Positions 8,159-26,512 of a DNA stretch of 64,000 nucleotides are shown piece after piece (the first letter of the stretch is position 1; each line of letters opens with the position of its first letter). Source of the DNA: Mantamonas sphyraenae STR306 (taxonomy: Eukaryota > Protista > CRuMs); contig JAPMXV010000052.1 of the NCBI GenBank assembly GCA_026936335.1, forward strand, positions 186,001-250,000, given 5' to 3'. Under the pieces are notes generated by a model. The model was not told the origin of the DNA and ran no database searches. It saw nothing but the letters and a program-made list of their open reading frames with translations. The position numbers and the translations under genes are program-made.

Positions 8159-11100
8159 ATGGAGGTCGAGCAGCGTGTAAACACAGACGCTGGGAGTGAA
8201 GCGACCACCGGAGTGGGTGGCGATGTGCGTGCGTTTGGCAACTGGCGAGCGTACGTCTCGACGGAAATCCAGACACTGGACACAAGCCAGCGCGAGGTGC
8301 TTGTGCAAGCTTTGTCTCTGCACGTCGCCGAGATTGTAGAGGATCCGCTGCAGGACGGCTGCCTGCATGTGTGCGACTTTGAAGGGGTGAGCTGCTGCCA
8401 ACTCGGGACGGGGGCTTGCTATTCAACAACCACAACCACTGACACGGATGAGTGTGTGTGTGCATGTGTATGGTGTGTGGTTGCAGGACGAGTACAACGA
8501 CTTTGTTGCGCAAGACCTGGCCATTGTGGGTATGTGGGCGGGTGAGCGATCAGGGGTGGTGGCGCGCCACGAGTTTTTGCACGGACGCTGACACCGCAAG
8601 GGGGTGGTCCTCGTGTGTGGGTGGTGTGGGTCGTTGGCGTACAGGGGTTCTTGCGGTGCTGCAGAGCTTGCCAGAGTCGGTGAGCGAAGAGCTGGGCGTG
8701 GATGTGGAGGTGAGGCAGGACCGGTGGAAATACGCAGATGATCAGAGTTGGCGAGGGCAGCTGTACTCGAGAACACTGGAGGGAATGGCCGTGTGTCCGT
8801 CAGGCTTTCATGAAGGCCAAAAGGTGAGCAGAAGGGGAGAGTGGGGTTGTAGACAGGAATCGTGCACTGACACAGGGAGTGTGGTACAGCGTCCGCTGGA
8901 GTTTTACGTGTGCGGGATGGGCGGTGAGTTCCACAGGGTGTTTACACACCTTGTGACGCATCTGGTGACCACGGGCTCGCCGACACACAAGTTTTCACTG
9001 GCGATCGAGCACGGAATGGAACTGGTGACGCCGGATTGGGTGCAGGCGTGCTGGAACAGCCACAGGTTGCCGGATACGTTTCCTTTCAAGCCCGTGTTTG
9101 GAGGGATCCGATTGTCAGTGACACAGATCAATGACAGTAAGTCGGATACAACGAGAGCGCTGATGTATGAGTGGCAGCTGACAAGGTGGGGTGCACGTAG
9201 AGGAGTGGCGTGCCGAGTTGAAGCAGATGGTGGAACAGCGTGCTGGGACGTACGAACCAAACTTTTCGCCAAATAGTACGCATCTGGTGGCAGCGAAACG
9301 AGAAGGGGGCAAGTATGAAGCTGCATTGCGGTGGGGCGTACCTGTGGTAACGGAGGCGTGGGTGGTAGATTCGTGTCGGATAGGGGTGTTGCTGGACGAG
9401 CGTGACTATGCGCTGGGCAGCAGCGGGGCGTCGAGTGCCGGACGGCGCAAGACAAACGAAATACTGGACGGATGTGTGGTGTATGTGCACGAGGAGGCGA
9501 CGGAGAACAGCGTGGAGAGCGTGGATGAGGAGCGAGCGAACAAGCTGCAGCGTGAGTTGCGGTTGATGGGAGCCACTCGAAGGCGCAAGTATGGCAACGA
9601 CGTGACGCATGTGCTGGTGACATCCAACGACGACGTGTCGACACTGCGCGACTCGCTGGATCAATTTGACGGCACGCCGTTTGTGCTGCGCGACACGTGG
9701 GCACTGCAATGCCACAAGTACCGCAGGAGACTGCACATGCGCCCGTTTGACCTACGTGTGCAACTGGAGGCGTTGGTAGAGCTGAGGAGGCAGCGAAAGG
9801 CTTGGAGACGGGAGCAGAAGGAGCAGGGCAAGGGCAAAGCAAAGGGCAAGAAGTCAGGCAAGGGCAAGGAGAACATAGGAGGGGTCAAGGCTGCCGCTGT
9901 GAGGCGTGTGCAAAAGAGCGCATCCATCTCTGGAGTGAACGATCCCATTTTGAGTGCATACGCAAGTTCGGAGAGCGGGACGACAACGACCACGACCACG
10001 ACAACGACGTCGTCTCAGGCACCGCCGGCTGTGCAGGAGCTGCTGGCCGACGCAGACGCCAAACCCATATTTGCAGGACGCAAAATGCTGCTGCTGGATC
10101 CGATCTGCAAGCACAACAAGGTGTTGAAGCAGGTGTTGCGGCAACGAGGGGCAAAGGTGGTGCGCAATGCAGCCAAGGCGAATGTGGTGGTGTTGCCGCA
10201 CCAGGATTCGCTACAGGCGCACGAAGACGTGTGGGAGGAGGTGCGGGAACGGTACGAACGTGATGCGGTGTGGTGTGTGACGGCGGATTGGCTGGCACAC
10301 AGCCTGGCACACGGACGGCTGCCGGCGCTGAACGAGTCGCCCATTTTCACGCCTGTGCCACACGCATTTCCAATTACAGACATGCGTGGGGTGCGCATGT
10401 GTGGGATTGGGTTGGACGCAGAGACGACCATGATTGTGAAGGACGCCGGGATGATGGCGACAGAGGATGCACAGGCGTACGTGGAGCAGTTGGATGTACA
10501 GGAGTGCACACACGCCATCTGTGGGGTCAAGGAAGAAGCGGAGCTGAGTGAAGAGGAGAGGACACGCGTGCAGGTGTGTGTACAACACGGCGTGGCTGTT
10601 GTGAGCATTCAATGGCTGTTTGACTGCGTGCGACGTGGCGAACGGTTGGACACAGACGGGTACGAGATGTACACACACACAAGCAACAAGCGCAGCGTCA
10701 GCCAGAGTGCATTCCGTCCTGCACTGGAAGTGGAGAGTGTGCTGGATGCGTTGGGCGGGGAGTATGCGTTTGACGAACGCAAGGATCGCAAGCGCAAAGC
10801 AGAGGCGCTGGGTGTGTTGGATGGCGCATGTGTGTGTGTGTGGAAGAACCTGCGAGGACGCAACGAGGCAGAAGCAACGGCAGAGGCGCTGGGAGCGCGT
10901 GTGGAGGAAAAGGTGCTGAGTGGCATCACACACTTTGTGTACGCCGAGGGAGGATCGTCCTCGGGTGGCGGAGGCAGTCTTCGCGAAGCACTGCGCAAGG
11001 TAGGACGTCTGCCGGGCAGGGTGCACATGGTGGCACCCGAGTGGCTTGATGCCTGCCAACGCGAACAGCGCTGGATGCCTGAATCCGAGTATCCGCCTGG

Positions 11101-12886
11101 GTACAACATGCGCATGGTGCTGGACGTGCTGTCCGAGAGCAGCCATGGACTTGGAGGATCCTCTCGTGGACAGGACGACGACCAAGAGGATGGAGGCGAC
11201 GACGAAATGGCCGTGTTGATTCGCGAGGATGTGGGCCAGCGGCGAAACGACACACGCAGGATGTCCACCGTGTCTGCCATGTCGACGACGAGTTCTTCCA
11301 GCTCGTCGTCGTCCACGTCGTCCTCCTCGTCCTCACGAGCCAGTGTGTCACGCGTCACGGGTGTGCCGCCGCGACCGTCGTCGAGCAGCCGCAGCAAGCT
11401 TGCGCAGCTGAGCAAGCGGCTAAGCAGTGGACTGAATGCAAGCACGGGGATGGGTGGCGGAGGCGAGGGGGAAGCTGGACGGAGGGGCATGTCACGCAAT
11501 GCGTCGTGGTCGAGTGCAAGCAGTGGGGCGGGCACGCGAAGGTACACGCGCGAGGAGTTGGAACAGGGACCCGTGTTGAAAAAGAGCCGCACGAGCGTGG
11601 GTAGTGCCGGGGGTGATCAGACGGTGGTGTGGGACGAAGGTGATCTGTCGCAGCAGGATTCCAACCTGATTGGATTTGACGATTCGCGCGCACGCAGCAG
11701 CAAGGCTCGCATACGAGAGAACGCGCAATCAGAGGACATGCAAATCAACGTGGAGGCTGAGATGGACTTTCTCCACAAGATGATGTGGACCAACACACCC
11801 GAGTCGCAGGCGTCGTCGCAGGCGTCGCAAGTGAGCGACAGCGAAGAGGATGAGGAGGAAGATGAGGAGGCAAAAGAGGAGGCAGAGAAGGACGGGAGGG
11901 GAGCGGCCATGATGACCGTGGAACAGGCCGCAGGAAGGAGCATGGCCATGAATCATCTTGACAGCAGCAGCCAGAGTGTGGACGACAGCGCAGGGAGCAG
12001 AGACACAAGTGCGAGCGGGAGTGTGCGCAAGGGAGGAGGACGCACACGAAGGACGTTGACACGTCGGCGTGGATCGCAAAGCACGGTGGGCTCGGCGGCA
12101 GAGGGTGAAGAGGCAGGCGGAGGGGGCAAACCACGCGTGTTTATGCTCAGCTCGTTCGCTGCGAAGCAAAAAGACACGTTTCGCAACGAATTGAGCCGCC
12201 TGGGTGGCACGGTGATCCGCTCGGAGGAGTTTGAGCGGGAGTGCACACACGTGGTTGCAGCAACGCCCGGGCGCAGCGAAAAGTTTCTGTGTGCCATTGT
12301 GAGCGGCAAGTGGCTGCTGAAAGAGTCGTACATACTTGCGTGCATCCAGGCGGGCCGGTTTGTGGACGAGCAGCCGCACATGTGGACCGAGACGGACGCG
12401 AAGGATTATCCGCAACACGAAATGGTTCTTCAGAGCATCGGGTACTGGCGCGAGAGGATTGGCGAACAGCTGCAAGACGAGGCACGCGTGCGGGAGGAGC
12501 GTGTGGGAAGCTTTGCAGACATGGTGGCTGTGACGCTGTCGATGGAGCACAAGCGCAGCGTGTTTGTGCGTCTGCTGCGCGCAGGAGGCTGCAGTGTGAT
12601 CAGCGACAAGCTGCCGTTTGAGAGCTTGGAGACAGTGACGCATGGGTTCATCGACCTGCGTTACCTGACCACCAAGCGCATGGTGGGCACGCTGAAGCGG
12701 ATTGTAAAGGAGAATCCCCACATCAAGTGGCGCATCCAGGAGTACGTGAGCGTGTACCTGCGCACTTCAGAGAGCAAGGAGGACATGGTCATCACGGTGG
12801 AGCGTCTCGAGGAGCTTGCAGAGACGGTGGGGGGTGTGGGCAAAAAGCGCGGCAAGGGATCCACTGAAACGAAGCCAGAGAAATGA
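8159..12886 (+). CDS. TOPBP1: TopBP1/Rad4/Dpb11-like multi-BRCT protein; 5 exons
   Basis: Introns 8387-8486, 8530-8644, 8824-8889 and 9137-9200 keep the frame. Many BRCT repeats (THLV..., W...C), and a C-terminal pair typical of TopBP1 (CTHVVAATPGRSEKFLCAIVSGKWLLKESYILAC). Confidence 0.8.
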
Positions 12887-13958: not shown

Positions 13959-16003
13959 TCAATCGAATTCGCTCGACACCGAATCGATGATTTCTGTGTT
14001 TTCGTAGGTGAAACCCTGGAAAAGGTCGGCCTTGGATGAGCTGAGAGTTGTTTCTGTGAGCGAGTCTGCGGCCACTTCTTCGGTAAACTCTTTGTCAAAG
14101 TTGCGAATGTCCGAATTGCTGCGTACGCGAGGGCGCACGGGCGCCTCGTAGTCCTTGTTGAGTGCCTTTTCCCAGTCGATGCCCTCGAACCACGGGTGGG
14201 CGGCAAAGTCATCGAGGGCGTTTGTGCCTGTGCCGAGCCGTTCGGTGGGGTTGCGTTCGAGCAACTGTGCAATAAAGTCCATGCCCTCGTCGGAAATCTC
14301 CGTGTGGCTGGGAAAGGTGAGTTCCTTGTACAGGATCTGTTCGTACATCTTCTTCATGTTGGTGGAGTAGAAAGGGGGAAGGCCGGTCAGCATTTCGTAT
14401 ACAAGGGTGCCCAGCGACCACCAGTCGACCTCTTTGCCGTACGACTTGCCCTCGAGCACCTCGGGGGCAAGGTACTCCGGGGTGCCGCAGAACGTCTTTG
14501 TCTTGTCTTCGTACCCGACGCCCTCTTTGCACAGGCCAAAGTCGGTGATGCACAGGTGGCCCTCGTAGTCGAGCAAGATGTTCTCCGGCTTGAGGTCGCG
14601 GTAGATGATGCCGCGTTCGTGGAGATGGTTGATAGCCAGCACCAACTCCATGGTGTAGAAACGCACACGGTCTTCGGAGAAACGCTTCTCTTGACGCAAG
14701 TGGAAGAAGAGTTCGCCGCCGTTGACAAAGTCGAGAATGAGATAGAGCTTGTCGTCGGTCTGGAACGAGTATTTGAGACCCACAATGAAGGGATGGGCGC
14801 TGATGCTTTTGAGAATGTTGCGCTCCGCGTTTGTGTGCTCGACTTTGTTCTTTTTGATGACGGTTTCCTTCTTGATGGTTTTCATGGCGTAGATGCAACC
14901 GGTGTCCTTCTTACGCACCTGCATGACCTTGCCGAAGCCGCCTTTGCCGACGACGTTGAGCAGCTCAAAGTCGTCGATGCTGATCTTCATGGCATCTTCA
15001 ATGGTGACGAATTCGATCTTGAGACGCACCTCTCCCGTGACGGTTTCGGTCTTTTTGATCTTTTTGCCACGCTTGTTGACCTGGCGTGGTGCCAGAGTGT
15101 ACCATTTGTCCACTGTTTTCTCGCCGACGTAATCGATGATGTTGAGGGTGAACTGGCCCATAAAATCGTCGCTGGTAAACTTGTTCTCGTCCCAGCAGGA
15201 GATGTGCAGCTCTGTGTCCACATCTGTGATATCGCTGTGGATGTGCAGGCGGGATGTGCCGGCGGTGTGGATGTGCAGCGTGGATCCGGGCGCATGTGAG
15301 TGGCGGGTCGGGAGGGCGATCGTTGATCGCTGGTGGGACGCGAAAAAAACGTGCACGTACAACTGGAAGCGCTCCATCCACATTGGGTTGAGATCAGCCT
15401 TGATGACTTGTGTCTGATGCTCCTGATGGGCGAGTTGGAGAACGAGGTAGGGATCCGAGGTGCCTGTGGGGTGCGTGGACGAGTCGCGCAAGAGTGTCCG
15501 TGAGCGAGGGCGTTTGGAGTGTGAACGCACGGCTGGTGTGGCTGACTGAGAGTAGGCAACGACCCACAGGGCAAGAGGGTAGAGTCACAGCACGGGCATG
15601 GGGCATGGGAAGGGCGACGCGGGCAAGGGGGAAGGGTGTGCAGGTTGGTGACGGAGGGGAGGCTGGCCGGAAGGATGAGCCCAGCGATTTTTGGTGATCG
15701 GTGGGACGACACGGAAGAGGGGGAAGTGGATGGAAAGCATGCGGACGATGATGGAGAGGACGTGTGGGGATGTGGACGGCGCAACCGAGGCCATGCAGGG
15801 ACGGAAACGGGTGTGTGGAACATGGGGCGCGGTGGGAGGAGACGCAGGAGCGGAAAGGCGTCGGGGAGACAGAGTCCCAGAGCGGAGCAAGGCGGGTGCA
15901 AATTTGGAAGCAACTCACCGGAACGGTCCTTGGCAGCCAGGTCCCTGCCAGCAAGCACTTGCACTTTGAGCTTTCCAAGCAGATCGGTGCTGTCGTCAGA
16001 CAT
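13959..16003 (-). CDS. C2-domain AGC Ser/Thr kinase (Akt/SGK/Ypk-like); 3 exons
   Basis: Introns 15918-15464 and 15360-15235. C2 domain: LKVQVLAGRDLAAKDRSGTSDPY..LNPMW..WDENKFTSDDFMG. Kinase motifs GKGGFGKV, YAMK, YRDLKPEN, DFGL and TFCGTPEYLAPE. AGC tail NFDKEFT..FQGFTY. Confidence 0.95.
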
Positions 16004-16116: not shown

Positions 16117-17898
16117 TCACAGGTCGCCATCGTCATCCGAGTCAAGATCCTGGTCGGCTTGGGATTCGATTTGGCGTTGGTCGAGTTTGAGCTGCGTCTC
16201 GGCGTTGTGCTCCTGCATCATGCGGCTCATGTTGGACAAGCGCTTGGCCTGGGAGGTGCTTGTGGACTTGATTTGGCCAAGGATGCCAGTGACGCCCGAG
16301 TCGACTTGCATGACGAGGCTGGATTGGCCTTCAAGCAGCTTGCGCGTTTGCGAAACGAGAGTCTGCAGCGTGTTTTCGCCCAACACATGGACCATGAGGG
16401 TCTTTGCTGGTGTTGCCGTCTTGCTTTGCGCGGAGATATGTCGAGGCACGTTGGAGACGCCTGTGTTGGTGCTGGGGTCCTCGATGAGGAGGCTGATGCG
16501 CCAATCCCCCACGTCGCTGGCACGCCACTTCCATGTGCTCAGAGAGCCTTCCGGGTGCAAAGACTCCTTGTTGGCAAGCACCATGAGCCCCACCCAATCG
16601 TTTTCCAGACGCAGGTTGTGCAGGCGGACGTTGATCACGCTGTGGTCGCTGGAGAGGAGATCCACTTCGCTCCTCATGTCCTCCTCCTGTGCATCGTCGA
16701 CGTTGAACGACCATCTCAGTGACTTGTTGCCTTGTCGTACATCCACAAATGAGCCACGAGGGGTCTGTGTGAGCGCGGTGAGCTCGATGTCCAACTTCCC
16801 TTGGCCATTGGGGGTGACGACCAACAGACCAGCATCTGGGTGCAGAAACGGCTGCATGGCCACAGAATTCACCATTTCCGATGGTACACTTGGCACCCAG
16901 GCATTGGCACAGATGAACGGGAGATCGAGGGTCATGTGTGGTTGTTGGGGTCGTTCGGCAACTTTGCCCTTGCCTTTTGTGTCGTCATGGACTGCGTTTG
17001 CAGAGTCAGACTCGGTGTCGGTGGATGCGGAAGAGGCAGATGATGCAGAGGAGGCTGCTTCCGCGGTGGTACGTGTGGCACGCCGTTGTGTCTTGGGCTT
17101 GCTGGGTTGCATGGGCTCCCATGAAAAAGTACCGTTGTGGTCGTATGGGTCCTTGAACGTGGCCATGTAGACGTTGTTGTTGAGGTTGTCCAGGCCCAGC
17201 AGGGAGGGCCTGCCGTCGACGACGGCAAAGCTGACAAAGGAGATTTCTTCAGACTTGGAGTCGTCTTTCTGGACAAGTGGAGCAGATGCCTGTGTACACG
17301 CTAGCTTGGTGAGCACCCATGAGCGCTTGTTGTGATTGGAGCGTCCAACACAGCCAAGCACGAGGACGTGCTCGGGGTTTGTTTGCAGCGGAACAAAGAC
17401 CACCGTGCAGCCGAGGCCGTCGGGCCTGCCCACGTTCCACAACACACCTGCGTGTTTGGTCGACGCGTCCAGATTGAATTGGTCCACAGAGCAGGCGTTG
17501 TCGTCCTTGGAGAGCTGGAGGCGCGTGAGGCTTTGCCCGAGGCGAAGGAACAGCACCTTGCTTGGTGTCAGAACGACGGCGGTGCCGTCGGTGAGCGAAA
17601 CGGCACTTTGTATGTTGTGAAGTTCGTGTCGCATGCTCAACAACTCCTCATCCAGGAGGAAAGGCTGGCCAAAGTCGAATTCGTCAAACTCAAAAAACAC
17701 GCCCGCCTCATGGTTGCTGGTGTCCTCGCCGTTGCCGTTCACGGGCGGAGGTTGGAGCACAGCAACACCCACGTCGTGCCACAGAAATGGGACCCCGTTA
17801 TCACTCCACGTGGGCGTGGCGACGCCTTTCTCGAAAGCGCTGCTCACGACCAACCTGCCCTTGCCCTCTGGCAGAGGCGATGGCGGAACAGAAGTCAT
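16117..17898 (-). CDS. Hypothetical protein of ~593 aa with a beta-rich N-terminal half
   Basis: Long open frame with protein-like composition. The likely start is MTSVPP at 17898, just downstream of the 17954 stop. No family recognised. Confidence 0.6.
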   Translation of the reverse strand: MTSVPPSPLPEGKGRLVVSSAFEKGVATPTWSDNGVPFLWHDVGVAVLQPPPVNGNGEDTSNHEAGVFFEFDEFDFGQPFLLDEELLSMRHELHNIQSAVSLTDGTAVVLTPSKVLFLRLGQSLTRLQLSKDDNACSVDQFNLDASTKHAGVLWNVGRPDGLGCTVVFVPLQTNPEHVLVLGCVGRSNHNKRSWVLTKLACTQASAPLVQKDDSKSEEISFVSFAVVDGRPSLLGLDNLNNNVYMATFKDPYDHNGTFSWEPMQPSKPKTQRRATRTTAEAASSASSASSASTDTESDSANAVHDDTKGKGKVAERPQQPHMTLDLPFICANAWVPSVPSEMVNSVAMQPFLHPDAGLLVVTPNGQGKLDIELTALTQTPRGSFVDVRQGNKSLRWSFNVDDAQEEDMRSEVDLLSSDHSVINVRLHNLRLENDWVGLMVLANKESLHPEGSLSTWKWRASDVGDWRISLLIEDPSTNTGVSNVPRHISAQSKTATPAKTLMVHVLGENTLQTLVSQTRKLLEGQSSLVMQVDSGVTGILGQIKSTSTSQAKRLSNMSRMMQEHNAETQLKLDQRQIESQADQDLDSDDDGDL

Positions 17899-17953: not shown

Positions 17954-20900
17954 TCATTGGCCCAGCATGCGCACCATCCGTTCGCGCACGTGGTCGCTCC
18001 ACGAACGTTGATCACTTTCCCGAAACGTCCATGTGAGCCCCTGGGGCTCTGGTTCCCTGTCATGTGCATCGATGTTGCCCTGGTCGTCATGGGTGGGTTT
18101 GGCTGGTTTGAAAACCAAACAGGGCAGGTGTTCGTGGCCGATGTGCAGGTAGTGCCCGAGAATGGCGATGCGTTTGGTGACATCGTCTTGATGGAGCCTG
18201 AGCCTACCCTGCAAACACGGCGTCAGAAGCTGCTGGAGAACCACAGTGAGCAAGCTGTGACCACGGTCGCACTTCCAGTCGGCAACAGAGGCGGTGAAAC
18301 TCATGATGATTTGACTCCACAGGGGATGATGCTCGTGGTGTTCGCTAATGCGTTCCATGACAGTGCAGTGCTTCTGGAACTGTTCTTCCCAGGCCTCCCG
18401 GATGCGTTTGCTCTCCTTCATCTTTTCCTCTTGCTGATAGGACAGAATGCCCTGCTCTTCGTCCTTGAGCACATCCATGATCCCGTCGATGCTGTTTTCG
18501 GCGCGATGCAGGAGGAGGAGCACCGAATCGGCCTTGTGCTGTGCCGACATGTCTCCCATCAGCATGTTCTCTTGATGGCTGGACTGCATGACGTCGCTGT
18601 GGGACTGAATTTGGTACCACAGGTGGTTGCACATCACTCGTGCGTGCTGAAGCACACGCATCACAAATGCACCCTTCATGCTCTGTGCAGCCACCCGTTT
18701 CAGGTCGTTGTGTGCACCCAACAGCAGATCGGCGGCTTCCTGGAGCTCCTGCATGTCTGCCCTCGCCATCACCAAGCTCTGGCGGTTCCTTCGCTTGCCA
18801 CTCAACTGCTCCAACGCCTTGCAGCGACGCAACACCTCCTGCACCCTCACAAGCCAACTGCGTGTCCACTCCACATCCTTGGCGTGCTGCATGTGTGCCA
18901 CGACCTGCCCGGCACGTGCTGCATCGTTTGTCTGCTCCTGTGATTCGCGCAGCCACGACGACGCAGTCGCCTCTGCCTCCAACAGTGATCGCACAAGAGG
19001 ACGAACACGTGAAGCGGCAGCCTCCAGAGCTTCGTCACTGGCCATGGCCACCGCTTCCCGCAACACTCTCCCAGTGATTGCGCCGGCGGCTTCTAAATCG
19101 CTGTCCTGTTGCTCCAAATCCACGAGGATGGACATTGCCTTTGTCACCTTGGCCTTGTCTGACCTGAACGTCGTGAGCAGATCTTCGGCTTGCTGCTTGG
19201 CCTGCTGCATGGCCTGTGCCTCACCGGGTGAAGAAGGCATGTCGTGGGCCCGTCGTGCCCTCACCTCGTCCTCAATCGCCTTCCATCGCATCCGGATGGC
19301 AAACACACGCTTTCGCAGCGCACGTTTCTCGTCAATGGAACTCAGCTGCTCCTCCGAAGCAGGGTTGCTGTTCTGCTGCAGGAGTTTCGACACAGCCTCA
19401 GCCAAGTTTGCCTGTAGGGCACTGGTGAGTGTGGACAGCGACGAGTTGCCATCCCTGTCCTCGCCCACGAACGGCTTTTCGGCATCTTGCAACAGGACAA
19501 CGAAGCGAGCTCCACCGACAGCCATTTCGCAGATCTCGATTTTCTCCTCCAACAGCTCGACCTGTTGCTCCAGGAGATTTTCAGAGTCCCCAAATGTGCT
19601 CTGGGGCGTGACACTGTCAATGATTAGCGTGGCGCGGGTAGCCTTGAGCACGTGGGAGTCGTCGAGGGTCAAGAGAGAACCACCACGCAGCTGGAGCTTG
19701 AGGCCGTTGTTCTCCCAGCGAGTACGTCCAGAGTAGTACAGGATGGACTTGTGGTCCGACGGATTCATGGTGCTGCTTGGACGAGGCACAGTCTCGGCAA
19801 TGGCGCCGATGCGTGCCTCGATCTTGCTGAGTTCGCGAAGAGAGACAAAGGGTTTCTTGAGCCGCTCTTTGCCGCGTGAGGATGGATCGGGGTCCATGAG
19901 GGAGCATTGGATGTGTTTGGGGTCGTGGACAAAGTTGCTGGCGACCCAGCGCTGGCGAACGCGTGCGGCGACGTCTTCGCGTCGCCATTGGAAGCCGTCC
20001 TGGTCACCCGAGCGCTCCTGGACAATCTCTTTGATGGTGGGTTCGATGAGACCGTGGTTTCGTTGTGCCCACAGAGTGAGGGGACGTTGTGGCTGCCCGA
20101 GGTGGGTGTCGACGTGGCTGTACGCATCAACCATGGCATTCCAGACAAGGCGCACGTTGTCTGCGGTGGCAAAGTGGTCGGCAAGCACCACGATGTTCTC
20201 TTTCGGCATGCCACTGTTGAGCAGGATCGAACGCATGGCGAGGACATCCTTTGCGGACGCTGGGTCGGTGCAAATCAGCAGGGCCCTGTCTGCGCCGGGG
20301 ACAAAGTCCAGGAAGACCTCATCCCTATCGTCGTACCACACACGCAACTTGGACGTGGTGACGGGAGAGGCCTGCCAGAGGGTGGCCCAATCCACATCTG
20401 TTCGCAAGTCGGTTGTGAGCAGGGAGCGCTGGCGACTGCGTCGCACAGGCGGTGGCAACACTTCGTTCTCCTCCTGATCCCTGAGCGATGGCAATCGAAG
20501 GACGGTGGCCAGGGGCTGGCCCAGGCGAAGGACAGAGACGACCAGGCGGACAACGAGAGAGAACCAGTTGAAGAGGGGCATGGACAGCACCACATACAGA
20601 GGCACACGCATGCTTTCGTGGTTCAACAGCGTGTAGTAGTTGTACCACAGGAAGAGGACTACCTGTAGGCAGTAGATGCGCAGAAGGAGCATGCCGAGGA
20701 CAGCAAACGCTTGCGTAGAAAGCACATAAACAAGGGTGGGGATCCGAAGAATGTCTTGGACCAACGTCACGAGGGTGGAAAGGTAGAACAGTTTGAGCAG
20801 GATGGTGTTTTGGCTGTTGAAGAGGATGAGATGGCGAAAGGTGCGACTGGCAAGGCTGCGCTTGCGATGGCGTTCGAGCTCGCTACCCACAAACGACTGT

Positions 20901-23762
20901 TGGGCAAGGTCGATGGCCGACATGATGGATGTGGGTGTGACCTTGGGCACAAAGACAGACGGAAGCATCTTGACCATTGTGTCAGGTTCCAGCTCGCGAG
21001 AAGCCATGCCAACGAGTTCGTTTTGGCCATCGAGCACTGCGCAGAAGGATGGATGGACAGGGTGTCAGTGTGATGAACGATGGACAAGAGTTGTGGAGGG
21101 GGGGAAGGGGGGGTGACTCACCTCCTTCGTGCCGCATGAGCACACTGATGAGAAACTGCTTTTCCCAGAAGGACACAGCGACGTCGGGACACATGCTGGA
21201 GCCTACGTTGCTCTGGAATGTGCTCACAAAGCCACCGAGTTGCATGCGCATGTCCTGCCACCCACGCACGAGATCGTTGAGCCAGGGGCGATGGAGATTG
21301 CCAAAGAGCCGCTGCTGTTCGTCCACTGCGTGACCGCTGAGGTGCATGATGCCGTCGAGAAAGCGCTGAAAGTCGGAGCTCTCCATCATGGCGATGCGAG
21401 TTTGATTCCGTTCGCCTGCAAGGACTCGACGTTGCATGATGGGTGAGTCGGCCACGGTGGGGTAGGCGTACACGCGCGTGGAGTCTGTGTGCACGGTGGT
21501 GTGTTGCACCTGTTCCACAGTGAGGTGGAAAGGAGGCAACGAGATGTTTTCCGGGAGGAGAACAGTGTCGTCGACGACCATGACGCCGTCGTAGGGCTTG
21601 CCATTCTCGTCCTCAAGTTGTGGGAGGCGATTGACCAGATTCCAGAAGACGGTGGCTGACCGGGTGCCCTGGCTGCTCAAGCTGTTGGGTGTAAGGGAAT
21701 AATGACATCCGTGGGCCATGGCCAGCTGCTGGGTCAGATTGTTGCCACGCAGGTCGTTGATGGCGGCTGTGGTTGCGTTGTCGCAGACGAGGACGTTCTG
21801 CGGCCCAAAACGCCTACAGGCACACACGAGGGCGGCTTCAAAGTAGACTGCGTGCTGCTCAATGTTGCGTGTGCAGAGGAGGAGGCACACAGCGTCAGCG
21901 CTGGTGTTGCTTGGTCGGTCGGGGTTGGTGTCGTCGCGGCCCTGCTGGCCCTGGAGAATGGGGAGAGGGGTCAGAGTCGGATAGCGTGTGCTGATCATGG
22001 CAATGATGAGGAGAATGTACTCGATGGGGTTGAAGACGAGGAGGTAGATGGCGTACTGGGAGCGAATGAGATTGTTGCCTGTGGTGAGCATGGCGAGTGT
22101 GATTGCCCAGAGCAACAGGATGACAAAGATGACCATGATGACGCCTTTGAAGATCCAGTAGGCGTCGAGGCGGGATTGCATCTTGGACAGACGCTTGCGG
22201 GCACGGAAAAAGTTGCGGACTTCGAGGTTGAGCTGGTCGTTGGAGCGATCACAGGTCGGCTCGCTGACGGTGTCACCGAGCCAACGCAGAGGACGCTGCC
22301 ACGTTTCGCTGCCGTCCAGTTGGTGGTCGTCATGAAACGTCCACGGGGAGGAGGAAGCGGCGGAGGCGGACTCGGAGCGGCGCCTCCAAAAGCTTCCCAA
22401 CACAGCACGGATGAGCACATGGCCAAAGTGCATGATGACGGCAATGATGAACGCCAGGATGGTGGAAACGAGCACGTAGATCCAGGAGATGATGTCGATG
22501 CGGCGGAGGAAGGAGAAGAGGTCGACGGCGGCGGTGGGAAAGGTGAAGATCATGAGGAAGCCCGCGAGCAGAAAGACAAGGACGACGTCGATGCCTGTGA
22601 TCTGCTGGGATTCCTTGAAGCCAACGAGGACGGAAAAGGACATGGGGCCACGGATGGATGTGAGCTGGCCGGCGGTGACCTTGAGGCATACGGAGCGATT
22701 GAGCTGCACATCGACGGCGTAGTCGAGCTGGCGGGCAGTAACATCCATGCCCTTGAGGGCGACAAAGGCATAGATGGAGCCGCCGACCTGGTCGATGGGA
22801 AAGGCCTCTGGAAGGTTGACGCAGGCGGTGGTGTTTGCGTGGACGTCGATGAGGGTGGAAAACAGGGTGAGTGGACGTCCTGTACCTTGTACAAGTGGCT
22901 GCATGGCTGTGGTTGTGTCCAAGCGCGAGACAATGACGTCGACCTCGTCGAGCTTGCAGTGCGGTTTGGCGACGACGGAGAGGAGTGCATCGGACACGAG
23001 ACCGCCCTCTTTGGCCATGGAGGTGGCGTTGACGTCAAAGGCGAGGCGTTTTCCGACAGAAATCAGGGTGGTGAGGGATGGGAGGATGGTGAGGTCATTG
23101 TTGGGGGGCGGGTGACGGCCTCCGCGGAGAGAGACGAGGTCGCTGGCGTAGATGGGGATGTCGATGTCGAAGGAGCGTGTTGTGTTGCCATCCGAGTTTG
23201 TACTCATGTTCCAGGTGTCGTAGAGGGTGGAGGAGAGATGGGCGCTCTGGCTGCGAAAGACGGAGAAAGGAGGGAGGCAGCGCGGGGCGGTGGCGATCCA
23301 GGTGATGTTGAGGCGTGTGAACAAGGATGTGACGGGAGACACAACGCGCAGCACAAAGTGATCGGTGGCGACACTAGCAACACCGATGCGAATGCCGAAG
23401 CGGTCGAGGGGCGTGTCCTGAGAGGTGACGTCGAGGAGCGAAACGCGAACGTCGGGCACCACCGGAAAATAGGTGCCCTCGTGGAAATTGACCTTGAGGG
23501 TCGCCTCGACATTGCCTCCTGGGTAGGAGAGCTGCCAGAGATTGTATGGCAGGCGTGTGGGGAGGAAACCAGCGTCGATGACGAGACCTTGTGTTCCGGC
23601 AAACAAGAGGCATTGGAGCCCCTGGGACATGTAACCCAAGTGATCGATGGCATACTCAATGTCCATGAATGTGCTGTCGATGTTTTTGTTGTTCTGCACG
23701 GCCTGGGCGGAAGCAGCGGCGACGCAAAGGAGGAGGAGGAGGAAAGGAAGCCCGGATTTCAT
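17954..23762 (-). CDS. ~1907-aa multi-pass membrane protein: signal peptide, 3 H-lectin-like domains, TM helices, degenerate GT2 glycosyltransferase, TM helices, degenerate caspase/C14-like domain, helical tail; 2 exons
   Basis: Signal peptide MKSGLPFLLLLLCVAAASA. Intron 21121-21037 (G|gtgagt...gcgcag|TG) joins ORF 20982-25274 to ORF 17954-21037 in frame. Domain motifs are detailed in the findings. Confidence 0.75.
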
Positions 23763-23825
23763 GTGCAGAGGGTTTGGCAGCGCAAGCGCGGCCAGACAAG
23801 ACCAGGAAGCCAGGAAGAAGAAGGG

Positions 23826-26512
23826 ATGGACAGCAACAAGCTGGCCTACAAAACATGGGCCCTGTCGATGGATGCCCATCGGCGTGCATACCCTTTTTTT
23901 GAGGACGAAGGTGAGGAGGGAGGCTGGAACGTATGTGGGGGGGGGGCACTGACACAAAGGGTTGTGCATGCATTCCTTGGGCGTGCGGGGTTTGCGTGTG
24001 GCACGCACGCAGACATTCACATCACCGTTCGGTGGAGAGACGACGGGGAGCAGGAAGAGAAGGAGGCGCTGCGCTTCTCGCTGACATTTCGCATGCTGAG
24101 CCTGGTGGGCACGGAGGACAAGGCGCACTGGAGAGATGTTGTGTGGAAGAACCAGCTGTGCTGTTTGTGGAGTGAGGAGTTTGTTCAGGACGAGGAGGGC
24201 AAGCTGAGTGTGCGCCGTGTTGCGCATCCGGTGTTGCCGTGGAAGCCAGGCGTGCAACTGTACTTTTGTCCCGACGTGCGACACGGGCACGAGTACGTGG
24301 TGTGCAAGGACAGCTTCCTGCCGCATGCAGAGTTGTACAAGGCGCAGATGCCAAACGAGGACAACTTGAACGCAACACTGGTGCACTCTGCGGCCAGCAT
24401 GGTGCGGAGCGAGCTGGAACAGACAGAGCTGATCAAAACACACAAGTGGAAGAGCGAGAGTCACCTGCGCAAGTTCATGGAGTGGAATGCGGCGCAGAAG
24501 CGCAACGTGGGGATCTGGGAGGATGGGCTGATCGACGAGATGTCCAAGGGGGAAGGGCATGGGATTCGAGGGAAAGACATCGCCCACGCGGTAGAGGCAG
24601 CCATGCCCTCTTTTGATTTCGAAAGCTATAGTGAGTTGTATGTGGGAGGAGAGGACGGATGAGTGGTGGAGGCTGACACGAACGGCGGGAAACAGAACAA
24701 TGGACGGCAGCCAAGATGCGGACACAGCGGCAATGGGGATTGGCGGCGTGTTTGGCATTGCCGCTGCTGTTCCAGGTGGTGTTGGTGGCGATGGAGGCGT
24801 GGGTGATCCGTGCGGGGGACGGACAGCGTGGAACGATGCTCGAGGCGTACGTGGGCGTGCTGGTGGCACGTGCGGTGCTGACGACGGTGGGACAAGCGTA
24901 TGTGATGAAAGTACGGTGGGGCTGGGAATGGAAGGAGCTGTTCCAAGGCGCAGGACGTGTGGTGGAGCTGAGCGGGATGCTGCTGGTGCCGCTTCTGGTG
25001 CACATCCTGGCGTGCAGCGTGCCCCAGGGGAACGAAAACCTGGAGCCCGGACATTGTGCGACTGTGTTGGGGTATGCGGTGGCGGTGATGGCGTACCAGC
25101 TGAGCTCCATGTGGACGGCCATCGGATTGAGTGCGACGCTGGAGTTTTTCGAGAAGGACGGAGAGCGATTGGGCTTCCGCGTGCGCTCCAGCGAGCAAGA
25201 GTGGAGTCCCATGACTTACCGGTGGCAAGCGGTGAGGTTGTCTGTGGCCGGGCACATGGTGCACTTCCTGACAATGGTGGTGAGTTTGTGGCAGGTGGCG
25301 TTGCCGGTGTTGCTGGAGCTGGAACATTTCATGGGCCACACGTACGTGTTGCTGTACATGCTTTGGGTGTTGTACGAGGTGCGCCAACACCGTAATCCCT
25401 TTTTGGAGGGAGGGCGAGGCAGGGAGGATCGCCGAGAAGAAGCAGCAGAAACAGGGGAGCAGGACAACGCAAACGACCAATCCCTGTCATCATCCACGGT
25501 CAGGGATCAGTATCTGTTGTACATGGAGACGATGAGCAAGGTTCAGGACATGGACAACAAGGCGTCTGCGGGAGGAGCGCGCGCACATCTGAAGTTTCTG
25601 CAGTCGCACAAACGGGGCCACGTGGAAGAGATGCCAGCAGGGAAGAAAGGGAAGCGGTACAAGCAGATCCACCGTCCGCAGAACACGTGGGTGCGCGACG
25701 CAGACGTGGCGGACACGGGCGTTGTGGAACTTGAAGATCGGGTCAAGGAGGGACGACATGTGGATGACTCGCGTGTTGTGTTGCTGCTGATGTGTGTGTG
25801 GGTGCCGCTGATTTTTGCCAACTCGGTGGTGCTGGACTGGCTGTTCACGAGCTACACGAGTGTGGTGAGCCTGGTGGTGGTTGTCACGGCGTCAGGGATG
25901 CTTTTGCTAGCGAGCAACATGCTGCAGGGAATCCCGTTTGCGGCGCTAAGCAACGTGGTTGTGCGTTTTGCGCTTCTGTTTGCGATTTCTCTGGGCAATG
26001 TGCCGGCAATGGGCCACCTGCACCGTGATGCGATCGCTCAGCGATTGGAACTGGCTGGCCAACTGCTACGCGCGGCGGCCACGAGCCTCGTGTACCTGAC
26101 TGTGTGGGTGCACACGCCTCTGTATCGACAAAAGGTACGTCGGCAGCTGCTGGGCGTGTTTGCAGTTGCTGCGGTGACGTCGCTGGCGACAGTGACGGCT
26201 CGGTTTGCGATGACGTCTGCGGCCGGAACAGTGCCCATTGCGTTTGAGTCGACACTGGCAGTGATGACCGTGACGGCAGTGATTCAGGAGTGGCAGCACG
26301 ATGGGAAGGGCATGCCTCACAACGCACTGTTTGATGGCACGCGGCGGTGGCGCTTCTTTGCAGGGAACGAGGTGGAAGAGGACGGAACAGTGACCGAGCT
26401 GCAGACACAAACCAGCAAGAGAGGGTGGTCAAAGACGAGTGAGATCGACAGATCGATGAAGAAGCCGCTGCTGGAAGATGAGCACGGGGCACGTGGAGTG
26501 GGACGAGCGTGA
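23826..26512 (+). CDS. Hypothetical multi-pass membrane protein; 3 exons
   Basis: Start MDSNKLAYK. Intron 23911-24012 (in frame, probable) and intron 24631-24695 (gtgagt..ctgac..aaacag) link into ORF 24716-26512, which has two clusters of hydrophobic helices. Confidence 0.65.

What the first reader, a model, noticed from the sequence alone, without database searches (positions are those of the whole stretch)
17954..23762. Receptor-like lectin, pseudo-glycosyltransferase and pseudo-caspase fusion
Seen: one intron (21121-21037) joins two ORFs into a ~1907-aa protein. It has a signal peptide and three beta-rich repeats (e.g. VNFHEGTYFPVVPDVRVSL..FVLRV..NITWIAT). Next come 4 TM helices, a domain with CLLLC..NVLVCDN..VMVVDDTVLLP..AVSFW..HEGVLDGQN..HRKRSL, and about 3 more TM helices. 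These are followed by RALLIC..KDVLAMRSILLNSGMPKENIVVLADHFATADNV..ILYYSGRT..LIIDSV and a long helical tail. Knowledge: these patterns match H-type lectin domains, processive GT2 synthases (D, DxD, ED, QxxRW) and peptidase C14 metacaspases (YSGHG, DxC). Here DxD reads DDT, ED reads QN, QxxRW reads HRKRSL, the catalytic His is Arg (~19725) and the catalytic Cys is Val (~19612). Inference: this is an intact double pseudo-enzyme that could couple outside glycan sensing to a cytoplasmic caspase-fold scaffold. I know of no described protein with this architecture.
Basis: partly seen in the sequence, partly recalled or inferred. Interest (0 to 1): 0.85.

Follow-up and report, generated by a model that had tools for sequence, protein, structure and literature searches.

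The report
Lectin, dead synthase, dead caspase fusion
A single-copy gene of the deep-branching protist Mantamonas encodes a 1907-residue membrane protein that joins an outside sugar-binding (H-type lectin) module to a polysaccharide-synthase body that has lost its catalytic residues and to an inside caspase-like domain that also lacks them, so it probably acts as a non-enzymatic receptor or scaffold.

Summary
The gene model holds. Two minus-strand exons (23762-21122 and 21036-17954), joined across an 85-nt GT..AG intron, give 1907 aa. A profile built only from relatives matches exon 1 up to position 260 and exon 2 from position 264.

The genome matches Mantamonas sphyraenae, and the gene is single-copy.

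- **Lectin:** the first ectodomain module is an H-type lectin (Z 10.4 to Helix pomatia agglutinin). Three lectin repeats are not shown.
- **Synthase body:** it belongs to an uncharacterised eukaryotic family of membrane GT2 synthase-like proteins, mostly from metamonads. Many members also carry H-lectins and some carry a kinesin motor. All 14 near-full-length relatives compared keep DDD, G(E/D)D and QRxx(S/G)W. The window protein alone has DDT, GQN and HRKRS.
- **Caspase-like part:** it matches a peptidase C14 profile (hhalign Prob 78.5%, P 1.7e-5; 150 shuffles reached at most Prob 1.9%). Arg replaces the catalytic His and Val replaces the Cys in the better mapping. AlphaFold gave no usable model, so the fold is probable, not proven.
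- **Unique region:** no homologue of the caspase-like part or the tail was found anywhere.

Expression, selection and function were not tested. No RNA run was listed and no orthologue was found.

The parts
21122..23762 (-). Exon 1 (aa 1-880 plus the first base of codon 881)
   Evidence: ORF and translation. It matches relatives-only GT profile positions 9-260 and ends at aa 879.
21037..21121 (-). Intron, 85 nt, GTGAGT...GCAG, phase 1
   Evidence: Sequence. The profile runs on colinearly across it, from position 260 to 264.
17954..21036 (-). Exon 2 (aa 881-1907, stop TGA at 17956-17954)
   Evidence: Translation. It matches profile positions 264-467 from its second residue.
23706..23762 (-). Signal peptide, aa 1-19
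   Evidence: Hydropathy peak. The relatives P0005 and P0017 start the same way.
23280..23588 (-). H-type lectin module, aa ~59-161
   Evidence: Pfam H_lectin 16.8 bits, below the cut-off. Relatives' ectodomain HMM 37.9 bits. AF2 pLDDT 61-84. Foldseek finds Helix agglutinins at E 2e-4. VIA gives 2ccv_A Z 10.4, rmsd 2.6, 95/99 residues.
22602..23279 (-). Rest of the ectodomain, aa 162-387; fold not determined; 5 of its 6 NxS/T sites lie here
   Evidence: Low pLDDT. No significant profile match beyond aa 214. MAFFT places aa ~290-360 opposite the relatives' second H_lectin, but this is unverified.
21993..22601 (-). N-terminal membrane block, aa 388-590: four hydrophobic segments and a 98-aa basic loop
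   Evidence: Hydropathy. The last helix aligns with the family's conserved LEY helix.
21122..21992 (-). Pseudo-GT2 domain, exon 1 part (aa 591-880): CDN 21777-21788, DDT 21564-21572, QDMRM 21243-21257, PDVA 21177-21188
   Evidence: Alignment A1, HMM alignment, motif table, Atlas features of glycosyltransferase clusters 0.94.
20804..21036 (-). Pseudo-GT2 domain, exon 2 part (aa 881-958): GQN 21020-21028 in place of GED, HRKRS 20855-20869 in place of QRxxSW
20519..20803 (-). C-terminal membrane block, aa 959-1053 (one probable interface helix and two transmembrane helices)
   Evidence: Hydropathy. This is the best-conserved stretch against relatives.
19370..20299 (-). Caspase-like (peptidase C14-like) domain, aa ~1127-1436: RALLIC 20270-20287, NIVVLAD 20177-20197, YYSGRT 19721-19738, IIDSV 19610-19624, FVVLLQD 19484-19504
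   Evidence: Atlas features: 25 of 30 nearest clusters are Peptidase_C14, score 0.93. hhalign against a 78-sequence C14 profile gives Prob 78.5%, P 1.7e-5, with controls at or below score 21. With the insert cut out, the alignment spans the whole domain.
19766..20089 (-). About 108-aa insertion inside the caspase-like domain (aa ~1197-1304); it contains the alternative His (RNHG, 20051-20062)
   Evidence: hhalign hits on either side are colinear on the template. GC3 is coding-like throughout.
17957..19369 (-). C-terminal tail, aa ~1437-1907; rich in A, L, E, Q and R; Pro+Gly 5.7%; no known domain
   Evidence: Composition and weak heptad signal. No hit in Pfam, NCBIfam, PADLOC or PHROGs. Helical character is inferred, not shown.

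Best explanation
This is an intact, single-copy gene of Mantamonas sphyraenae. It encodes a multi-pass membrane protein derived from a membrane-integrated GT2 polysaccharide-synthase family that carries extracellular H-type lectin modules.

This member keeps the lectin, the transmembrane helices and the GT-A scaffold. It has lost the residues that do the chemistry: DDD->DDT, GED->GQN, QRxxSW->HRKRS, PHGA->PDVA and EY->RM.

It has also gained a cytosolic C-terminal extension specific to this lineage. That extension is a C14 caspase-like domain without the His/Cys dyad (YSGHG->YSGRT, DxC->DSV), interrupted by a ~108-aa insert, followed by a ~470-aa probably helical tail.

**Shown:** the gene structure, family membership, the motif losses and the lectin fold.

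**Probable:** the caspase-like fold and its dead dyad.

**Inferred:** the protein no longer polymerises sugar. It works as a non-catalytic surface glycan receptor, adhesin or scaffold. The lectin binds an outside glycan; GalNAc-type ligands are typical of this lectin class. The dead GT may still hold a nucleotide-sugar or a glycan, since the first-motif Asp and two of three Asp of DDD remain. The pseudo-caspase and tail would recruit cytosolic partners, in the way kinesin motors are attached to active relatives.
For: **Gene model**
- Searches give the ORFs, intron and product.
- The relatives-only HMM scores exon 1 at 62.4 bits and exon 2 at 87.0 bits, against at most 5.3 bits for 1000 shuffles. 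The two matches are colinear across the intron, from position 260 to 264.
- GC1/2/3 is 0.61/0.41/0.74, and GC3 is high in every 60-codon block.
- The gene is single-copy and the genome holds no other family member.

**Relatives**
- An exhaustive search gave 11 hits, the best at E 2e-14.
- These relatives carry H_lectin plus Glyco_tranf_2_3.
- They come from Barthelona and other BaSk metamonads, Spironucleus and Nk52.

**Motifs:** every near-full-length relative compared keeps DDD, G(E/D)D and QRxx(S/G)W. The window protein alone differs.

**Lectin:**

**Caspase-like domain:**
Against: - No transcript evidence: no RNA run was listed.
- No orthologue was found, so no dN/dS and no test that the substituted residues are conserved.
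- Pfam does not call GT2 or C14 on the window protein itself.
- The AlphaFold model of the caspase-like part is unusable (pLDDT 40), and its Foldseek search is meaningless.
- The C-terminal half of the caspase alignment is not significant on its own (P 0.029).
- An alternative His (RNHG) aligns to the catalytic His in the best unaltered hit.
- Four hydrophobic segments between the ectodomain and the GT would put the GT outside the cell unless one of them does not span the membrane.
- The proposed receptor or scaffold role is inference only.
Confidence: 0.6

Rival explanations
1. It is still an active glycosyltransferase or synthase that uses non-canonical residues. For example, DD plus the first-motif Asp might suffice for metal and nucleotide binding, and another base might replace the Asp of GED.
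For: The first-motif Asp (CDN) and two of three Asp of DDD are kept. The GT scaffold and membrane helices are conserved. The genome has no other member of the family that could do the job.
Against: Five separate conserved motifs are changed at once, including the catalytic-base position (GED->GQN) and the Trp of QRxxSW. All 14 near-full-length relatives keep them across very deep divergence. The window protein is also the longest branch in both trees (2.7-3.6 changes per site).
Confidence: 0.08
2. It is a non-functional relic: a recently inactivated gene that has not yet picked up stop codons, or one that is not expressed.
For: Catalytic motifs are lost in two domains. There is no transcript evidence, no orthologue to show constraint, and a very long branch.
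Against: There are 1907 codons without a stop and a precise intron. Codon-position GC periodicity is strong and even along the whole length, including the insert and the tail. Membrane helices and structural motifs are still recognisable against relatives separated by very deep divergence. The substitutions E->Q and D->N are conservative in shape rather than random.
Confidence: 0.1
3. The region aa ~1127-1436 is not a caspase fold. It is an unrelated alpha/beta domain that happens to share the N-terminal sequence pattern of C14 peptidases. The protein would then be a single pseudo-enzyme with an unknown tail.
For: Pfam, NCBIfam, PADLOC and PHROGs report nothing. AF2 failed. Only the first ~90 residues align significantly without editing. 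Atlas feature scores of 0.93 occur for 4-10% of shuffled proteins.
Against: The unaltered hhalign score of 40.0 compares with at most 20.5 in 150 shuffles, 21.1 for the reversed sequence and at most 16.4 for other parts of the protein. A second colinear hit places YYSGRT on the SGHG loop. With the insert removed, 185 columns align in order across the whole domain, including LLTLDD, IIDSV and FVVLLQD. 25 of the 30 nearest Atlas clusters are C14.
Confidence: 0.17
4. It is a non-catalytic subunit or regulator of a different active synthase, for example another GT2 of this genome, rather than an autonomous receptor.
For: Pseudo-enzymes often regulate active partners (general knowledge). An earlier unchecked note reports another lectin-like GT2 gene elsewhere in the genome.
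Against: The genome has no paralogue of the same family, and the neighbouring genes suggest no partner. No test of binding was made.
Confidence: 0.12

Closest known systems
Uncharacterised H-lectin + GT2 membrane proteins of BaSk metamonads (e.g. KAL0237071.1 Barthelona sp. PCE, KAL0211801.1 and KAL0204920.1 'Eukaryota sp. TZLM'), all annotated 'hypothetical protein'
   Same: They share the order of parts: an ectodomain with an H-type lectin, transmembrane helices, a cytosolic GT2 domain and C-terminal transmembrane helices. Identity over the GT and membrane region is 21-27%. Homology is significant for both exons and for the first lectin module.
   Different: They keep DDD, GED and QRxxSW. 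They lack the caspase-like domain and the long tail (no hit beyond query aa ~238). Three of them carry an N-terminal kinesin motor instead.
Processive membrane GT2 synthases (cellulose synthase BcsA/CesA, chitin synthase, hyaluronan synthase); Pfam Glyco_tranf_2_3 / Glyco_trans_2_3
   Same: A GT-A domain sits between membrane helices, and the motif series D, DxD, (E/D)D, Q-R-x-x-W is recognisable in the relatives. The relatives reach the Pfam GT2 models.
   Different: A profile of the family finds no solved chain by sequence. The window protein reaches no Pfam GT2 model, and its catalytic motifs are replaced.
H-type lectins: Helix pomatia/aspersa agglutinin, SLL-2, the discoidin I/II C-terminal domain
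   Same: The same beta-sandwich fold: 2ccv_A Z 10.4, rmsd 2.6 over 95 of 99 residues; discoidin I Z 9.5.
   Different: About 13-19% identity, below the Pfam cut-off (16.8 against 24 bits). It is tethered to a multi-pass membrane protein rather than being a soluble trimer. Sugar-binding residues and oligomer state were not tested.
Peptidase C14 (bacterial orthocaspases, metacaspases) and known pseudo-caspases such as cFLIP or Trypanosoma brucei MCA4 (the latter two from my own knowledge)
   Same: Profile similarity to C14 over beta1-alpha1-beta2-alpha2, and colinear His- and Cys-loop positions. Loss of the catalytic dyad as in the known pseudo-caspases.
   Different: It is fused to the C-terminus of a synthase-like membrane protein and carries a ~108-aa insert between alpha2 and the His-loop strand. 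It has no detectable homologue. It is not related to the nine CHAT domains of its own genome.

Membership tests
H-type lectin (Pfam PF09458) | Score at or above the Pfam gathering cut-off (24 bits) | tested here: not met
   15.0-16.8 bits, E 0.008-0.027, aa 91-158. 19.8 bits in the six-frame genome search.
H-type lectin (Pfam PF09458) | The beta-sandwich fold of Helix pomatia agglutinin | tested here: met
   AF2 with 8-row alignment A2, pLDDT 61-84 over model residues 40-142. Foldseek finds 4q56/2ce6/2ccv at E 2-5e-4, TM 0.68. VIA gives 2ccv_A Z 10.4.
H-type lectin (Pfam PF09458) | Homology to domains that do pass the Pfam model | tested here: met
   The relatives' ectodomains hit H_lectin at E 1e-9 to 5e-23. 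Their profile scores the window ectodomain at 37.9 bits, against 8.4 bits for the best of 1000 shuffles.
H-type lectin (Pfam PF09458) | GalNAc-binding residues and trimeric assembly | not tested
   The alignment to solved lectins is too weak (13-19% identity) to map the binding site with confidence.
GT2 membrane synthase family (Glyco_tranf_2_3-like; the metamonad, Nk52 and Mantamonas group) | Significant homology across the GT domain and the flanking membrane helices | tested here: met
   phmmer E 2e-14 against 1.84 billion proteins. The relatives-only HMM scores 62.4 and 87.0 bits.
GT2 membrane synthase family (Glyco_tranf_2_3-like; the metamonad, Nk52 and Mantamonas group) | DxD metal and nucleotide motif (DDD in this family) | tested here: not met
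   DDT at aa 731-733. All 14 near-full-length relatives, and the fragment P0003, have DDD.
GT2 membrane synthase family (Glyco_tranf_2_3-like; the metamonad, Nk52 and Mantamonas group) | Catalytic-base motif G(E/D)D | tested here: not met
   GQN at aa 884-886. All 14 near-full-length relatives have GED or GDD.
GT2 membrane synthase family (Glyco_tranf_2_3-like; the metamonad, Nk52 and Mantamonas group) | Q-R-x-x-(S/G)-W acceptor and diphosphate motif | tested here: not met
   HMMER aligns HRKRS- here and MAFFT aligns QSFVGS. Either way Trp is absent.
GT2 membrane synthase family (Glyco_tranf_2_3-like; the metamonad, Nk52 and Mantamonas group) | Transferase or polymerase activity | not testable with these tools
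   This needs a biochemical assay. No member of the family has been characterised, as far as my searches show.
Peptidase C14 (caspase, metacaspase, orthocaspase) | Match to the Pfam PF00656 model | tested here: not met
   No hit, even at E <= 10, on the isolated segment. The six-frame PF00656 search of the genome does not report this locus.
Peptidase C14 (caspase, metacaspase, orthocaspase) | Profile-level similarity to C14 domains, above controls | tested here: met
   hhalign against 78 bacterial C14 domains gives Prob 78.5%, P 1.7e-5, score 40.0. Shuffles reach at most 20.5, the reversed sequence 21.1, and other parts of the protein at most 16.4.
Peptidase C14 (caspase, metacaspase, orthocaspase) | Caspase/hemoglobinase fold | tested here: inconclusive
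   The single-sequence AF2 model has pLDDT 40.2 and its Foldseek search gave no meaningful match. The order of secondary-structure elements fits, but at low confidence.
Peptidase C14 (caspase, metacaspase, orthocaspase) | Catalytic His in the SGHG loop | tested here: inconclusive
   In the better mapping YYSGRT puts Arg there. In the unaltered top hit, RNHG (His, aa 1208) is aligned to the same column instead.
Peptidase C14 (caspase, metacaspase, orthocaspase) | Catalytic Cys in the DxC(x)SG loop | tested here: not met
   IIDSV aligns to ilDaC, with Val at the Cys column. This half of the alignment is of low confidence on its own (P 0.029).

The most novel reading that the evidence does not exclude
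A polysaccharide synthase has been converted into a signalling receptor. The outside lectin, and possibly the dead GT pocket and channel, would sense a glycan or nucleotide-sugar. The dead caspase and its tail would pass this on by recruiting partners. This would be the first receptor known to derive from a processive GT2 synthase, and a natural double pseudo-enzyme.

A wider point concerns the active relatives, which combine an H-lectin with GT2, sometimes with a kinesin motor, and include a diplomonad member. They may be an unrecognised class of eukaryotic wall or cyst polysaccharide synthases.
Probability: 0.25. Interest if true: 0.8.

Novelty: new variant of a known kind. Interest (0 to 1): 0.6.

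Why it matters
Pseudo-enzymes are usually found one at a time and next to active paralogues. Here two unrelated catalytic folds in one chain have both lost their catalytic residues, in a genome with no active copy of the synthase family. That points to a repurposed function rather than regulation of a sister enzyme.

The work also brings to light an unstudied eukaryotic family of membrane GT2 synthase-like proteins with extracellular H-type lectins. The family occurs in metamonads, a nucleariid and a CRuMs protist, and some members are fused to kinesin motors. This parallels the myosin-fused chitin synthases of fungi. The family gives testable candidates for wall or cyst polymer synthesis in protists.

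Mantamonas sits near the base of Amorphea, so the gene also bears on how old this architecture is.

Tried and rejected
**Searches that came back blank**
- The word-indexed protein search was blank for both exons. It is limited by candidate length and shared words.
- PDB sequence searches were blank for both exons and for the family profile.
- NCBIfam, PADLOC and PHROGs gave nothing meaningful for the caspase-like part or the tail.
- Two metagenome scans for close relatives found nothing.
- No RNA run was listed for the locus.

**Structure**
- The single-sequence AlphaFold model of the caspase-like part was poor. Its Foldseek search was uninformative. I do not count this against the fold.

**Ideas tested and rejected**
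- Three sequence-related lectin repeats: rejected, because self-comparison does no better than shuffles.
- The caspase-like part derives from the genome's own CHAT domains: rejected (hhalign Prob 0.5%; BLASTP E 0.87).
- The 986-aa plus-strand ORF 21702-24662 is a gene: rejected. It has no family hit and lies antisense to exon 1, whose frame is supported by homology.

**Unresolved**
- The trees did not resolve whether the gene is ancient or transferred. The window protein is a long branch, so its placement is unsure.

**Left out**

Full report
**Gene model and organism**

On the minus strand, an ORF ending at 21122 and an ORF from 21036 to 17954 are joined by an 85-nt intron (21121-21037, GTGAGT...GCAG). 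The intron splits a codon as G|TG. The product is 1907 aa and ends at TGA 17956-17954.

The strongest support for the splice comes from homology. I built an HMM only from relatives (12 sequences, GT plus membrane region). It scores exon 1 at 62.4 bits and exon 2 at 87.0 bits, against at most 5.3 bits for 1000 shuffles. Exon 1 matches profile positions 9-260 and ends at its residue 879 of 880. Exon 2 starts at profile position 264 with its second residue.

GC at codon positions 1/2/3 is 0.61/0.41/0.74, and GC3 stays high in every 60-codon block, including the insert and the tail.

The assembly holding the window has 25,061,354 bases in 78 contigs.

The gene is single-copy. The genome holds no other member of the GT family and no other H_lectin match. 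No RNA run was listed, so expression and splicing are not shown directly.

**A note on method**

I left the joined step out of all searches and folds. I built the joined translation only inside local scripts, for three purposes: hydropathy, coordinates, and the pieces used as negative controls.

In two local hhalign runs I also cut the ~108-aa insert out of the caspase-like segment. These runs are marked 'analysis only' wherever I cite them.

**Ectodomain**

Pfam gives only a sub-threshold H_lectin hit (15-16.8 bits, aa 91-158). Two further lines confirm the lectin.

- A profile of the relatives' ectodomains, which themselves hit H_lectin at E 1e-9 to 5e-23, scores the window ectodomain at 37.9 bits over aa 60-214. 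The best of 1000 shuffles scores 8.4 bits.
- AlphaFold with the 8-row alignment A2 is confident only for model residues 40-142 (pLDDT 61-84). That part matches the founding H-type lectins. Foldseek finds Helix aspersa and Helix pomatia agglutinins at E 2-5e-4 with TM 0.68. VIA gives 2ccv_A Z 10.4 (rmsd 2.6, 95 of 99 residues), discoidin I Z 9.5 and SLL-2 Z 8.3.

The remaining 226 residues of the ectodomain are not resolved. Self-comparison shows no repeats above shuffles. One lectin module is therefore shown, not three. MAFFT places aa ~290-360 opposite the relatives' second H_lectin, which is only a hint.

**Synthase-like body**

The exhaustive HMMER search with exon 2 aa 1-611 returned 11 proteins, the best at E 2e-14. 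All of them match only query aa ~3-238, which is the end of the GT domain plus the membrane helices.

- **Sources:** Barthelona sp. PCE and the unnamed 'Eukaryota sp.' TZLM1-RC, TZLM3-RCL and GEM-RC1, plus environmental contigs. A follow-up search added Spironucleus salmonicida ('putative glycosyltransferase') and Nk52 from EukProt.
- **Pfam on them:** H_lectin plus Glyco_tranf_2_3 or Glycos_transf_2. Three also carry an N-terminal kinesin motor.

The motif table from hmmalign is clear. All 14 near-full-length relatives keep DDD, Q(D/N)xEY, (H/S)GA, G(E/D)D and QRxx(S/G)WD. The window protein alone reads as follows:

| Family motif | Window protein | Position |
|---|---|---|
| DDD | DDT | aa 731-733 |
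| Q(D/N)xEY | QDMRM | aa 836-840 |
| (H/S)GA | PDVA | aa 859-862 |
| G(E/D)D | GQN | aa 884-886 |
| QRxx(S/G)WD | HRKRS-, no Trp | aa 937-941 |

MAFFT offers QSFVGS for the last motif instead. Trp is absent either way.

In processive GT2 synthases the Asp of the (E/D)D motif is the catalytic base, and the QxxRW motif holds the acceptor and the diphosphate (established knowledge of BcsA, chitin and hyaluronan synthases). Loss of transferase activity is therefore the likely consequence.

The first-motif Asp (CDN) and two of the three Asp remain, so some nucleotide-sugar binding cannot be excluded.

A profile of the family finds no solved structure by sequence. The family is therefore far from the characterised synthases. 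Atlas language-model features of aa 600-880 also point to glycosyltransferase clusters (0.94).

**Topology**

Hydropathy gives four segments before the GT and about three after it. The relatives have three segments between the ectodomain and the GT. That number puts the GT in the cytosol, as it must be for a nucleotide-sugar enzyme. In the window protein, one of the four segments (most simply aa 388-406 or 424-442) probably does not span the membrane.

After the GT, the first amphipathic segment (aa 959-977; conserved LKxFYLxExxTIxQD) is probably an interface helix, as in other synthases. It is followed by two transmembrane helices, which would leave the C-terminal extension in the cytosol. 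This paragraph is inference.

**Caspase-like domain**

No library HMM sees it, and no homologue of it exists in 1.84 billion representatives. Atlas features place 25 of the 30 nearest clusters in Peptidase_C14 (0.93). That is a lead only.

To test the lead, I collected 78 bacterial PF00656 domains with the genome search, aligned them and ran hhalign.

- **Unaltered segment (exon 2 aa 236-560):** Prob 78.5%, P 1.7e-5, score 40.0. The alignment covers beta1 (RALLIC), alpha1, beta2 (NIVVLAD) and alpha2.
- **Controls:** 150 shuffles reached at most score 20.5 (Prob 1.9%), the reversed sequence reached 21.1, and other 325-aa pieces of the protein reached at most 16.4.
- **Second hit:** a colinear hit puts SILYYSGRT on the template's fSGHG loop (P 0.035-0.045).
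- **Insert removed (analysis only):** Prob 93.7%, P 2e-7. 185 columns align in order across the domain: YYSGRT on yfSGHG (His->Arg), LLTLDD on L...D, IIDSV on ilDaC (Cys->Val), FVVLLQD on the next strand.

The caveats are these:
- The C-terminal half alone is not significant (P 0.029).
- In the unaltered top hit, RNHG (His, aa 1208) falls on the catalytic His column.
- AlphaFold without an alignment failed (pLDDT 40).
- The Foldseek search on that model means nothing.

The domain is not related to the nine CHAT domains of the same genome. I put the caspase-like fold at about 0.8. Given the fold, I put a dead dyad at about 0.8.

**Tail**

Residues ~1437-1907 are rich in A, L, E, Q and R, with 5.7% Pro+Gly. 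The heptad signal is weak and no family matches. 'Helical' is plausible but not shown.

**Evolution**

Trees of the exon 1 and exon 2 parts, built separately, show the window protein as the longest branch (3.6 and 2.7 changes per site). In the exon 1 tree it lies outside the well-supported clade of seven lectin-bearing BaSk proteins (98% SH-aLRT). Its exact place is unresolved. I cannot say whether the lectin-GT2 architecture is ancient or was transferred.

**Surroundings**

The neighbours give no functional clue:
- an orphan ORF 56 nt downstream;
- a C2-domain AGC-type kinase at 13959-15530 (-);
- a BRCT-repeat protein at 9191-12886 (+);
- orphans upstream.

**How it most likely works**

- **Shown:** an intact gene for a lectin-bearing, synthase-derived membrane protein that lacks the family's catalytic motifs.
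- **Probable:** a C-terminal caspase-like domain without the dyad.
- **Inferred:** a non-catalytic receptor, adhesin or scaffold that binds an outside glycan and presents a cytosolic protein-interaction platform.

The kinesin motors on active relatives suggest that this family is normally coupled to the cytoskeleton. The tail here may serve a comparable coupling role.

**Novelty**

Each part is a known kind: an H-type lectin, a GT2 synthase and a pseudo-caspase. My paper searches found no description of the lectin-GT2 family or of this combination. The sequence searches found no protein sharing the caspase-like part.

I rate it a new variant of known kinds, with an interest score of 0.6.

Noticed in passing
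Proteins P0014, P0015, P0016 (Eukaryota sp. TZLM1-RC and GEM-RC1): Active-looking relatives are fused to an N-terminal kinesin motor: kinesin, a transmembrane helix, an H-lectin ectodomain, then a GT2 synthase. This is a kinesin counterpart of the myosin-motor chitin synthases of fungi. I found no paper describing it.
   Followed up: partly
Protein P0018 (Spironucleus salmonicida, 'putative glycosyltransferase'): The family has a diplomonad member, and many members carry H-type lectins, a class whose typical ligand is GalNAc. The Giardia cyst wall is a GalNAc polymer made by an activity only 'tentatively called' cyst wall synthase in a 2026 review. Whether this family supplies that enzyme is an untested idea.
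   Followed up: no
L003:667-2784 (+) = G000:C49, about 452.2-454.3 kb: A 705-aa ORF holds an intact caspase-like CHAT domain (ILHYSGHG, VSACYSG) followed by a P-loop STAND/NACHT-type NTPase. Nine CHAT-type loci are found in this genome. This agrees with earlier notes on NLR-like CHAT-STAND genes.
   Followed up: partly
window 21702-24662 (+): A 986-aa ATG-started ORF lies antisense to exon 1 and has no family hit. It is most likely a by-product of the strong codon bias (GC3 0.74) of the real minus-strand gene.
   Followed up: partly
window 13959-15530 (-) and 9191-12886 (+): The neighbouring genes are a C2-domain AGC-type protein kinase (Pkinase E 5e-78, Pkinase_C) and a multi-BRCT protein. 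There is no evident link to the finding.
   Followed up: no
Protein P0019 (Nk52, EukProt): A nucleariid member of the same GT2 family has a ~800-aa N-terminal ectodomain with no lectin hit, and GDD instead of GED. The family therefore pairs the synthase body with different outside modules in different lineages.
   Followed up: partly
window 16117-17898 (-): The next gene downstream starts only about 56 nt after the stop codon of this gene and has no Pfam family.
   Followed up: no
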